In this document: in pieces, positions 50,601 through 53,600 of the stretch
Numbering within the stretch: position 1 is the stretch's first letter
Layout: each line of letters begins with the position of its first letter
Assembly (NCBI RefSeq): GCF_964204645.1
Contig: NC_134032.1
Coordinates: forward strand, 16,418,275-16,482,274
Direction of reading: 5' to 3'
Source: Tubulanus polymorphus
Taxonomy: Eukaryota > Animalia > Nemertea
DNA: 64,000 nt
The notes under the pieces: generated by a model
The model's input: only the letters and a program-made list of their open reading frames with translations
Told to the model about the DNA's origin: nothing
Database searches by the model: none
Program-made: the position numbers and the translations under genes

Positions 50601-53600
50601 GTATGTTTTTAGGGCGTTTGAATTGGTCAATTGAAAATGAAGGTCGTTCCCCGAACACTATCGGTTCGTCAAGTACCGAAGAAGGAGAAATCTTCTCTTC
50701 CCGTAAGTCAATTCCAGGACGGCGGACTGGCGGGGAGAGATGAGGGGGGCGGGGAGAGATGAGGGGGGTGGGGAGAGATGAGGGGATTCATATCGAGCTG
50801 TTTGTTTATTTCAGCTGAATCAGTTGCGTCATCGCCCAGTAATACATGTAATACAGTGTTGTATCGAGCTGTTGTATGTGTTTATACTAATATCAGTGGA
50901 CTCGTTACGTTTCTCAATGATGGTTCTCTACACAGCATCAATCACTCATTCGTTCACATGTTATTTGGTTACACACAACAGGAAGTCATTGGAAAGGTAT
51001 TTATTTTATCTTCTATATATCTATTTTCTCTGCTACATATGATTTTGATATTGTATTACAGGATATCGCGTCGTTTGATATTGTATTACAGGATATCACC
51101 TTGTTTGATATTGTATTACAGGATATCGCGTTGTTTGATATTGTATTACAGGATATCGCGTTGTTTGATATTGTATTACAGGAAATTACGTCGTTTGATA
51201 TTGTATTACAGGATATCGCGTCGTTTGATATTGTATTACAGGATATCGCGTCGTTTGATATTGTATTACAGGATATTACGTTGTTTGATATTGTATTACA
51301 GGATATCGCGTCGTTTGATATTGTATTACAGGATATCGCGTCGTTTGATATTGTATTACAGGATATCGCGTCGTTTGATATTGTATTACAGGATATCGCG
51401 TCGTTTGATATTGTATTACAGGATATCGCGTCGTTTGATATTGTATTACAGGATATCGCGTCGTTTGATATTGTATTACAGGATATCGCGTCGTTTGATA
51501 TTGTATTACAGGATATCGCGTCGTTTGATATTGTATTACAGGATATCGCGTCGTTTGATATTGTATTACAGGATATCGCGTCGTTTGATATTGTATTACA
51601 GGATATCGCGTCGTTTGATATTGTATTACAGGATATCGCGTCGTTTGATATTGTATTACAGGATATCGCGTCGTTTGATATTGTATTACAGGATATCGCG
51701 TCGTTTGATATTGTATTACAGGATATCGCGTCGTTTGATATTGTATTACAGGATATCGCGTCGTTTGATATTGTATTACAGGATATCGCGTTGTTTGATA
51801 TTGTATTACAGGATATCGCGTCGTTTGATATTGTATTACAGGATATCGCGTTGTTTGATATTGTATTACAGGATATCACGTTGTTTGATATTGTATTACA
51901 GGATATCATGTTGTTTGATATTGTATTACAGGATATCACGTCGTTTGATATTGTATTACAGGATATCACGTTGTTTGATATTGTATTACAGGATATCACG
52001 TTGTTTGATATTGTATTACAGGATATCATGTTGTTTGATATTGTATTACAGGATATCGCGTCGTTTGATATTGTATTACAGGATATCATGTTGTTTGATA
52101 TTGTATTACAGGATATAACGTTGCTGATACCAGATTTCTATGATTTATTAGAATCTATTGATACGGAGGATTCTTTACCTCTTCCTCCTCTTGATGATTA
52201 CGATGAAGATGAAGAATATATCGCAAAGGATTCTCAAGTTAGAGGTACGTCAGTCAACTGGTCAATCGGTTAACCAGTCGGTTTTTCAACTGGACAGTCA
52301 GTCGGTGTTTATATCTATTACAGGTCGATGTGATGATGATTTAGGAATTGGTAAAAGTATCAGCTCCGATTCAAACAGTGGCGCCACCTGCACATCTCCT
52401 AAACTTCACTGCGATGATCTCCGGTAAATATCGGATATTGCTCGAGTTCTCTGCAATATTGAGTTGTTGTTGTAAACTCCTCAGCTTTAAGGGACAGTAC
52501 AGTTAGAGCGATCCTGTTTACTGTTTGGGGGCAGAGGTAAAATAAACTATCAGTTATAACGAGTCACACGTGAACTAAGAATCAATCTGTGTGTCGTCTG
52601 TTGATGAAAACTGATGAACAATTTTATTGTTGTTTGGTTCTAGCGAGGACTCTGACTCTGACTCTGACTCGACTCCGACTCAGCGAGTCTCTGTGTCATT
52701 ACTAATTGCTGTATTGTGTGTTTATTATTACAGATGTGAAACTGCTGAATTGATTGAAGAAGCAAATAAAATGATTCATGCAAACATATTCAACAACAGT
52801 GACTCTCAAACTGTAGAATCTGAACGTCATGACTCACAAAATGTAGAATCTGAACGTCATGACTCTCAAAATGTAGAATCTGAACGTCATGACTCACAAA
52901 CTGTAGAATCTGAACGTCATGACTCACAAACTGTAGAATTTGAACGTCATGACTCTCAAAATGTAGAATCTGAACGTCATGACTCACAAACTGTAGAATC
53001 TGAACGTCATGACTCTGTAGAATCTGAACGTGGTGATAGACAAGTTGTGATTGATATGCTGAATGACTCCAGTGTGTTAGAATTCCAACAGGATATCAAT
53101 GAACAATGTAATGATGATTTAGATAGTACAACTGAACTATTAATGGCTGATCCGTTAGTTTCACCAAGTGGCGCCCCCACTACTGTTGAGTTCTCCAGTC
53201 CGTCGATATCTCGTAGAGATAGAGTTGAATTCCGAGGAACTACGACCTCGACCCCGGCCGCGACCTTCAAACACCGGTTTACTCACAGTTTCATTATTCC
53301 TGATGGAAGTTACGAATGTCAAGGTCGTCATAAAGATGGAAATGAAATCGGTAGGAATTTAATTCTGCAATTTAACCCTGAACCTAGTCGACCTAGTAAT
53401 CCAAAACCTAGTCGACCTAGTAATCCAAAACCTAGTCGACCTAGTAATCCAAAACCTAGTCGACCTAGTAATCCAAAACCTAGTCGACCTAGTAATCCAA
53501 AACCTAGTCGACCTAGTAATCCAAAACCTAGTCGACCTAGTAATCCAAAACCTAGCCGACCTAGTAATCCTGAACCTAGTCGACCTAGTAATCCAAAACC

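What the first reader, a model, noticed from the sequence alone, without database searches (positions are those of the whole stretch)
51043..52244. Thirty-six tandem, in-frame 3' splice sites inside a PASK PAS domain
Seen: the acceptor TTTGATATTGTATTACAG|GATAT of the exon beginning DITLLIPDF is repeated 36 times with an exact 30-nt period. The upstream exon ends in phase 0 (IGK|) and the array has no stop in the exon frame ([10 protein letters not shown])n. Each acceptor therefore gives an in-frame protein, with 0 to 35 extra decapeptides (up to 350 aa) inserted in the middle of a PAS fold. Established: spliceosomes usually favour the first AG after a branch point, so the conserved PASK form needs the last of 36 near-identical sites. 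Inference: either the repeat acts as a length-tuning device for PASK, or there is an unexplained mechanism (e.g. exon definition, repeat-binding silencers) that selects the distal site.
Basis: partly seen in the sequence, partly recalled or inferred. Interest (0 to 1): 0.85.

Follow-up and report, generated by a model that had tools for sequence, protein, structure and literature searches.

The report
Splice-junction minisatellite in ribbon-worm PASK
A 30-base tandem repeat has copied the last 18 bases of an intron plus the first 12 bases of the next exon 36 times inside a ribbon worm's PAS-kinase gene. This kind of repeat, called a "mirage" minisatellite, is already known from amphioxus and human F7, where the extra splice sites stay silent, so it is most likely an ordinary intronic repeat and not a device for tuning protein length.

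Summary
There are 36 head-to-tail 30-nt units at 51044-52123 with no indels. Each unit carries an intact 3' splice module, and the exon frame is open through all of them.

The array occurs nowhere else in the 268-Mb genome. Its unit is the intron end plus the exon start, so it arose locally by duplication across the junction. This is the "mirage" class described in amphioxus (Adh3, globins, PGBD5) and, for donor sites, in human F7 intron 7. In those cases mRNA is spliced normally.

The same PASK gene also carries a donor-side mirage with 16 intact copies of its 5' splice site, and most of the decoy copies would break the frame. 35% of the window is minisatellite, and being in frame and stop-free has a chance probability of about 0.2.

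Which acceptor is used is therefore inferred. I put use of the authentic last site at about 0.7.

The scan has already reported this class on other pieces of this genome (s1-484238, s1-487524), and has reported this same stretch twice.

Verdict: a new member of a known kind, of modest interest.

The parts
50815..50996 (+). PASK exon F (upstream exon). It ends ...[10 protein letters not shown] in phase 0, and the donor AAG|GTATTT follows at 50997.
   Evidence: The phase fits exon E (50613-50702), read.
50997..51043 (+). Non-repeated, T-rich head of the intron. Together with the first 18 nt of the array it forms the presumed ancestral 65-nt intron (50997-51061).
51044..52123 (+). Acceptor-side 'mirage' minisatellite of 36 x 30 nt. 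Each unit is 18 nt of intron 3' end (a TTGAT branch-like site, a T-rich tract, ACAG) plus 12 nt of exon start. The decoy AGs end at 51061 + 30k, and the authentic AG is at 52110-52111.
52112..52244 (+). PASK exon G ([15 protein letters not shown]...QVR + 1 nt), followed by the donor GAG|GTACGT. Its first 12 nt are the exon-derived part of unit 36.
   Evidence: The phase fits exon H (52324-52423), read.
49150..49290 (+). PASK exon B (C-terminal half of PAS-A), whose 3' end and donor were also tandemly copied.
   Evidence: (1LL8, E 1.5e-6).
49291..50022 (+). Donor-side mirage in the same gene. It has 2.3 copies of a 115-nt unit containing 86 nt of exon B plus the donor, then units of 28/29 nt. 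In all there are 16 intact AG|GTAC(G/A)T sites, counting the authentic one at 49291.
52800..53015 (+). Coding 30-nt x 7.2 minisatellite inside exon I (52734-53350), encoding SDSQxVESERH repeats in the PASK linker.
55978..56110 (+). PASK kinase-domain exon, which establishes the gene's identity.
   Evidence: 3DLS, E 1e-14; next best kinase 6e-6; Pkinase.

Best explanation
This is a 'mirage' minisatellite. A 30-nt segment straddling the 3' splice junction of a once 65-nt intron (18 nt of intron, 12 nt of exon) was tandemly duplicated, then amplified and homogenised by slippage or unequal exchange to 36 copies, and the intron grew to 1,115 nt. The 35 upstream copies are decoy acceptors that are mostly not used. 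The spliceosome joins 50996 to 52112, the copy contiguous with the rest of exon G, giving the canonical PASK. The likely reason (inferred) is cross-exon pairing: the acceptor closest to the exon's own donor at 52245 is chosen once the intron is too long for simple intron definition. That every decoy is in frame and stop-free is a coincidence of the 30-nt period, not a design.
For: Shown here:
- The unit is intron end plus exon start, with 36 copies and no indels.
- The array is unique to this locus in the 268-Mb genome, so it arose locally.
- The interior is homogeneous (units 6-7 and 9-24 identical) with diverged edges, as expected for minisatellite turnover.
- The variants are almost all CpG transitions. 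Non-CpG changes number 3 in 432 exon-derived bases against 0 in 648 intron-derived bases, which is not significant, so nothing indicates selection on the splice signals or on the peptide.
- 35% of the window is minisatellite. 17 of 37 arrays have a period divisible by 3, and 43% of their frames are open.
- The same gene has 15 decoy donors after exon B. Eleven of them are out of frame, and only one (49435) is both in frame and upstream of the stop at 49474. Yet the downstream exons remain intact and PASK-like, so this gene must be spliced accurately despite decoy arrays.
- Only the last acceptor restores the IG(K/Q)-x-I-T-x-L-I-P motif, which exon C carries uninterrupted.

From papers:
- Amphioxus mirages, including an acceptor-side one in globin BflGb6, do not disturb splicing (PMC3087553; PMC3902484).
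- The identical pseudo-donors of the human F7 IVS7 VNTR are silent (PMC1557585).
- The proximity rule for intron versus exon definition is described in PMC9225289.

Leads only: earlier scan follow-ups on this genome report that RNA joins to the true site at other such arrays.
Against: Sequence strength does not favour the last site. All 36 sites share the same 18 nt, with TTGAT at -14. Only the first site keeps the native T-rich upstream intron, and it lies a typical 65 nt from the donor. Introns in this gene are about 65-120 nt when free of repeats, so intron definition would predict the first acceptor.

Predicted RNA structure does not expose the last site. Its unpaired probability is 0.20, against about 0.31 for the others.

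Because the decoys are in frame and stop-free, nonsense-mediated decay would not hide their use.
Confidence: 0.7

Rival explanations
1. Stochastic or regulated use of many of the 36 acceptors gives a ladder of PASK isoforms with 0-35 decapeptide inserts. This is the reader's 'length tuning', and it would resemble the variable monomer number produced by tandem splice sites in polyubiquitin UBC.
For: All sites are identical in their 18 intron bases and each carries its own branch-like TTGAT. All are in frame and stop-free, so such products would escape nonsense-mediated decay. There is a precedent for stochastic splicing in a tandem array (PMC10809524).
Against: The in-frame property has a chance probability of about 0.2. 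There is no sign of selection in the array. The known mirages and the F7 pseudo-sites are silent. The UBC sites are dual-specific AGGT, whereas here the junction reads AG|GA. If translated, the repeat is modelled as one uninterrupted beta ribbon of about 340 residues, not a domain, and it would be inserted in a conserved motif. No representative protein in the library is more than 55% identical to it.
Confidence: 0.15
2. The first acceptor (51061/51062) is used constitutively by intron definition, so the array is coding and this worm's PASK allele carries a 350-residue repeat. It could be a tolerated insert or a damaged allele.
For: The first site keeps the native upstream intron and gives a 65-nt intron, typical of this gene. 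Short-intron genes pair the sites closest across the intron (PMC9225289). This gene already tolerates a coding 30-nt minisatellite in exon I and has a 617-nt exon.
Against: The same points as for the ladder rival apply. The conserved IGK-DITLLIP motif would be split. Every documented acceptor-side mirage yields normal mRNA.
Confidence: 0.1
3. The copy number, or the array itself, is an assembly artefact.
For: Tandem arrays can be mis-sized in assemblies. The amphioxus globin paper notes one mis-assembled mirage. I could examine no reads.
Against: The array is only 1.08 kb inside a 16.7-Mb contig of a 77-contig assembly. It has an ordered, non-periodic pattern of variant units at both edges, which collapse or over-expansion artefacts seldom produce.
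Confidence: 0.05

Closest known systems
Amphioxus 'mirage' minisatellites (Adh3, Canestro et al. 2002 as cited in PMC3087553; globins BflGb6 and BflGb9; TnC; PGBD5, PMC3902484)
   Same: Tandem head-to-tail copies of a segment spanning an exon/intron boundary, found on both the acceptor side and the donor side. The AG or GT signals are intact in many units. The interior is homogenised and the edge units have diverged. They occur in a minisatellite-rich genome.
   Different: The host is a nemertean, not a cephalochordate. The copy number is much higher (36, against 3-6 in the globins) with a short 30-nt unit. Every decoy is in frame and stop-free. Normal splicing and length polymorphism, both shown in amphioxus, could not be tested here.
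Human F7 intron 7 37-bp VNTR (PMC1557585)
   Same: A minisatellite whose boundary unit contains the authentic splice site, so that 5-9 identical functional pseudo-sites follow it and only the exon-contiguous one is used. The donor array at 49291-50022 of this gene is the direct analogue.
   Different: The F7 case concerns 5' splice sites and was tested with 50 minigene constructs. The array in question concerns 3' splice sites, for which the exon-contiguous copy is the most distal from the partner site, and it is untested.
Polyubiquitin UBC tandem dual-specific splice sites (PMC10809524)
   Same: A tandem array of splice sites at an in-frame period, which could yield a variable number of repeat units in the protein.
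   Different: The UBC units are whole functional domains delimited by AGGT sites that act as both donor and acceptor, and the isoforms are observed in RNA. Here the sites are acceptors only (AG|GA), the unit is 10 residues of half-intronic origin, and no isoform has been observed.
NAGNAG and other tandem alternative acceptors
   Same: Neighbouring in-frame acceptors that add or remove residues.
   Different: NAGNAG has two sites 3 nt apart sharing one branch point and one pyrimidine tract. Here there are 36 complete modules 30 nt apart.

Membership tests
Mirage (splice-junction-spanning) minisatellite | Head-to-tail tandem array of minisatellite unit size | tested here: met
   Period 30, 35.8 copies, 0% indels. 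36 units in register.
Mirage (splice-junction-spanning) minisatellite | The unit contains both intron-derived and exon-derived sequence of the host gene's own junction | tested here: met
   The unit is 18 nt ending in ACAG plus 12 nt matching the start of exon G. The last unit runs straight into the exon and the first straight out of the intron.
Mirage (splice-junction-spanning) minisatellite | Local origin, not a dispersed repeat family | tested here: met
   36 of 36 genome-wide matches lie in this array, and the reversed control gives 0.
Mirage (splice-junction-spanning) minisatellite | Concerted evolution inside the array with diverged boundary units | tested here: met
   Units 6-7 and 9-24 are identical. 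The variants cluster in units 2-8 and 25-36.
Mirage (splice-junction-spanning) minisatellite | mRNA is spliced at the authentic site and the decoys are silent | not testable with these tools
Own-genome gene records are withheld. Protein searches found no model or transcript ORF across the junction.
Mirage (splice-junction-spanning) minisatellite | Length polymorphism or instability between alleles | not testable with these tools
   The assembly holds only one copy of the locus, and no reads were available.
PASK (PAS domain-containing serine/threonine kinase) | An N-terminal PAS-A domain and a C-terminal kinase domain closest to PASK | tested here: met
   Exon B against 1LL8, E 1.5e-6. Kinase exon against 3DLS, E 1e-14, with the next kinases at 6e-6.
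PASK (PAS domain-containing serine/threonine kinase) | The interrupted region (exons F and G) is a PAS fold | tested here: inconclusive
   Pfam gives no hit for either exon at E <= 1, and there is no PDB relative. BLASTP against exon C finds nothing. Only the short motif resemblance is visible.
Tandem dual-specific splice-site array (UBC type) | AGGT sites usable as both donor and acceptor at each unit boundary | tested here: not met
   Every junction reads ACAG|GA. The only donor-like hexamer in the unit (GTATTA at positions 10-15) has T at -1 and lies 3 nt from the AG.

The most novel reading that the evidence does not exclude
The 36 equivalent, self-contained, in-frame and stop-free acceptors are used stochastically or in an allele-length-dependent way. 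Under this reading the worm makes a ladder of PASK proteins with a variable beta-prone decapeptide insert in its second PAS-like region. That would be a hypervariable VNTR read out directly at protein level through splice-site choice.
Probability: 0.12. Interest if true: 0.6.

Novelty: new member of a known kind. Interest (0 to 1): 0.3.

Why it matters
By class the finding is ordinary: it is a junction-spanning minisatellite of the kind named 'mirage' in amphioxus. Its value is as a natural experiment. It offers 36 identical 3' splice modules, each with its own branch-like site, at a 30-nt pitch. They lie between a donor only 65 nt from the first copy and an exon whose own donor is 133 nt from the last copy. 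Intron definition predicts the first copy and exon definition predicts the last. Because all products are in frame, nonsense-mediated decay cannot blur the answer. One RT-PCR would show which rule a short-intron lophotrochozoan follows. The finding also extends mirages from cephalochordates to nemerteans, which the scan has already noted elsewhere in this genome.

Tried and rejected
No place was reported as human-like.

2. Representative-protein search with the repeat plus exon G. The hit list was flooded by unrelated periodic proteins of at most 55% identity.

3. The search for homologous proteins on exon F inside two stop-free references, to reach candidates of 245-780 aa and 78-247 aa. There were no hits. 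The full-length PASK model of this genome, or of Lineus, is out of reach of the length filter.

4. The look-up of encoding contigs with the window's own INO80C-like protein, to read the neighbouring gene calls. Own-genome records are withheld.

5. RNA structure as the selector of the last site. The last acceptor is predicted to be less accessible, not more, and the z-scores of -0.06 to -1.28 are not significant. Rejected.

6. BLASTP of exon C against exons F and G, to support the PAS motif statistically. The sequences are too short and gave no alignment.

7. AlphaFold2 of the hypothetical translated repeat. It gave a single beta ribbon over about 340 residues from a single sequence. I treat this as uninformative about function.

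8. The GTSF1 intron array at 25879-26536, which looked like a second acceptor mirage. It is not adjacent to the exon. Rejected.

Exons were handled one by one by reference.

Full report
OBSERVATION

The sequence at 51044-52123 is a perfect-period minisatellite. Tandem Repeats Finder gives period 30, 35.8 copies, 96% matches and no indels. Cutting it in register gives 36 units. Each unit consists of 18 bases that end in ACAG, followed by 12 bases that match the start of the exon beginning at 52112.

The 18 intron-derived bases and the next two bases are identical in all 36 units. Differences occur only at unit positions 21, 24-27 and 29, and almost all are CpG transitions. Units 6-7 and 9-24 are identical to one another, and the variants cluster at both ends of the array.

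Translation from the first AG| is open for 395 codons. It reads 35 decapeptides of the [10 protein letters not shown] type, then [15 protein letters not shown].... The upstream exon 50815-50996 ends ...EVIGK in phase 0 before GTATTT.

IS IT MORE THAN CHANCE?

The array is real and local. A 24-nt probe across the junction matches 36 times in the whole 268-Mb assembly, all inside this array, and the reversed control matches nowhere.

The features that made it look designed are not unusual here.
- The window holds 37 separate minisatellite arrays covering 35% of its bases.
- 17 of those 37 have a period divisible by three, and 43% of the reading frames across those 17 are stop-free.
- In this array a second + frame and one - frame are also open.
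- Together, 'in frame and open' has a chance probability of about 0.2.
- Without the array the intron would be 65 nt. Of the 94 placements in which a 30-nt seed duplication touches a 65-nt intron, 58 span one of its two junctions. This is simple counting, not a tool result.

WHAT GENE AND WHAT ORGANISM

The gene is PASK. Exon 49150-49290 matches the solved human PAS-A domain 1LL8 (E 1.5e-6). Exon 55978-56110 matches the human PASK kinase domain 3DLS at E 1e-14, against 6e-6 for the next kinases.

A single-exon INO80C-like gene in the window has Lineus longissimus (65% identity) as its best named relative, followed by molluscs. The host is therefore a nemertean, but not that species.

Tools did not confirm that exons F and G form a PAS fold. 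Pfam and the PDB give nothing for either exon. What can be seen is that exon C of the same gene carries ...[12 protein letters not shown]... uninterrupted, while exon F ends ...VIGK and exon G begins DITLLIPDF. Only the last acceptor rebuilds that motif. My recollection of human PASK agrees, but it is memory and not a test.

WHAT IT IS

Tandem repeats that span an exon/intron boundary are a described class. They were named 'mirages' at the amphioxus Adh3 locus (Canestro et al. 2002, cited in PMC3087553). They were found again in amphioxus globins, including an acceptor-side array in BflGb6 made of intron end plus exon start, with 6 and 3 units in two haplotypes. There the authors saw concerted evolution in the interior and diverged boundary units. 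Mirages also occur in the lancelet TnC and PGBD5 genes (PMC3902484). In all of these the mRNA is normal.

The human F7 gene offers the same situation on the donor side. A 37-bp VNTR begins at the exon 7 junction, so 5-9 identical and demonstrably functional pseudo-donors follow the true one, yet only the exon-contiguous site is used (PMC1557585).

The present array meets every structural criterion of the class (see the membership table).

INTERNAL SUPPORT FROM THE SAME GENE

Two introns upstream, the 3' end of exon B and its donor have also been multiplied. There are 2.3 copies of a 115-nt unit that includes 86 nt of the exon, followed by units of 28/29 nt. I count 16 intact AG|GTAC(G/A)T sites between 49291 and 49978. 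Eleven of the 15 decoys are out of frame. Of the in-frame ones, only 49435 lies before the stop at 49474-49476.

A gene whose downstream exons are still intact and recognisably PASK must therefore be spliced correctly in the presence of a decoy array. This shows that such arrays are tolerated here and are not used to tune the protein.

HOW THE SITE IS PROBABLY CHOSEN (INFERRED)

The best branch-like motif, TTGAT with its A at -14, lies inside the unit and is copied 36 times. Comparable motifs at -13 to -17 precede other real acceptors in this window. Each unit is thus a self-contained 3' module, and the decision is which module is engaged.

The published proximity rule says that in short introns the sites closest across the intron pair, while with long introns the sites closest across the exon pair (PMC9225289). 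The last acceptor lies 133 nt from exon G's own donor, so cross-exon pairing selects it. That matches what mirages and F7 do.

The opposite prediction is not negligible. The first acceptor keeps the native T-rich upstream intron and sits 65 nt from the donor, which is the normal intron size in this gene.

Predicted RNA structure offers no help. The last site is, if anything, less accessible (0.20 against about 0.31 unpaired), and the folds are no better than shuffles.

WHAT COULD NOT BE DONE

The decisive evidence is the transcript junction.
- The representative-protein job was swamped by unrelated periodic proteins.
- The length filter of the homology search kept full-length PASK models out of reach.
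- Own-genome gene records are withheld.
- A single-sequence AlphaFold model of the hypothetical translated repeat is one continuous beta ribbon. I regard it as uninformative, except that it does not look like a domain.

EARLIER SCAN NOTES

I found the mirage literature before reading the scan's notes. The notes then showed that two follow-ups on other pieces of this same genome reached the same classification. They state that RNA joins to the true site at those arrays, and that chance placement in very short introns explains the pattern. I confirmed the ribbon-worm attribution and, for this locus, the chance argument. The RNA statement remains an untested lead for this array.

VERDICT

The structure is a mirage-type splice-junction minisatellite in a nemertean PASK gene, which makes it a new member of a known kind.

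My probabilities are:
- about 0.7 that the authentic last acceptor is the main site and the decoys are essentially silent;
- about 0.15 for an appreciable isoform ladder;
- about 0.1 for constitutive use of the first acceptor;
- about 0.05 for an assembly problem.

Interest is modest at 0.3. The locus is a clean natural test of intron definition against exon definition, but not a new kind of system.

Noticed in passing
window 49291-50022: Donor-side mirage in the same PASK gene. There are 16 intact copies of AG|GTAC(G/A)T, and the 115-nt units re-copy 86 nt of exon B. Four or so units have lost the GT (they read CAGTTACGG). Only the decoy at 49435 is both in frame and ahead of the stop at 49474.
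   Followed up: partly
window 52800-53015: A coding 30-nt x 7.2 minisatellite inside PASK exon I gives SDSQxVESERH decapeptide repeats in the linker between the PAS and kinase regions. This gene therefore already tolerates an expressed VNTR.
   Followed up: no
window 1-64000: 37 distinct minisatellite arrays cover 35% of the window. They include two 4-kb arrays (20949-24962, 67 nt x 60, and 42627-46647, 29 nt x 134, CT-rich). Nearly every PASK intron holds one.
   Followed up: partly
window 51053-51058 and every 30 nt after: Each unit also contains GTATTA, the same hexamer as the real donor after exon K (GAG|GTATTA near 54428), but with T at -1 and only 3 nt before the AG. Donor-to-acceptor distances within the array would be 30k+9 nt, again divisible by three. 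Splicing inside the array seems unlikely but is not excluded.
   Followed up: no
window 38194-38772 (- strand): A single-exon INO80C-like gene (YL1_C domain, PF08265). The genome's own 183-aa model is in the protein collection. The best named relative is Lineus longissimus at 65% identity.
   Followed up: partly
window 25879-26536: A 23-nt x 28.7 array in the GTSF1 intron carries an acceptor-like CTCTACAG in every unit but ends 65 nt before the exon (26601). It is an ordinary intronic minisatellite, not a junction copy. Its reverse complement forms the array at 16231-16564.
   Followed up: partly
window 49150, 50613, 54258 and 26601 (real acceptors): Several real acceptors here have their best yTnAy branch-like motif only 13-17 nt upstream of the AG. 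This suggests unusually short branch-to-AG distances in this genome.
   Followed up: no
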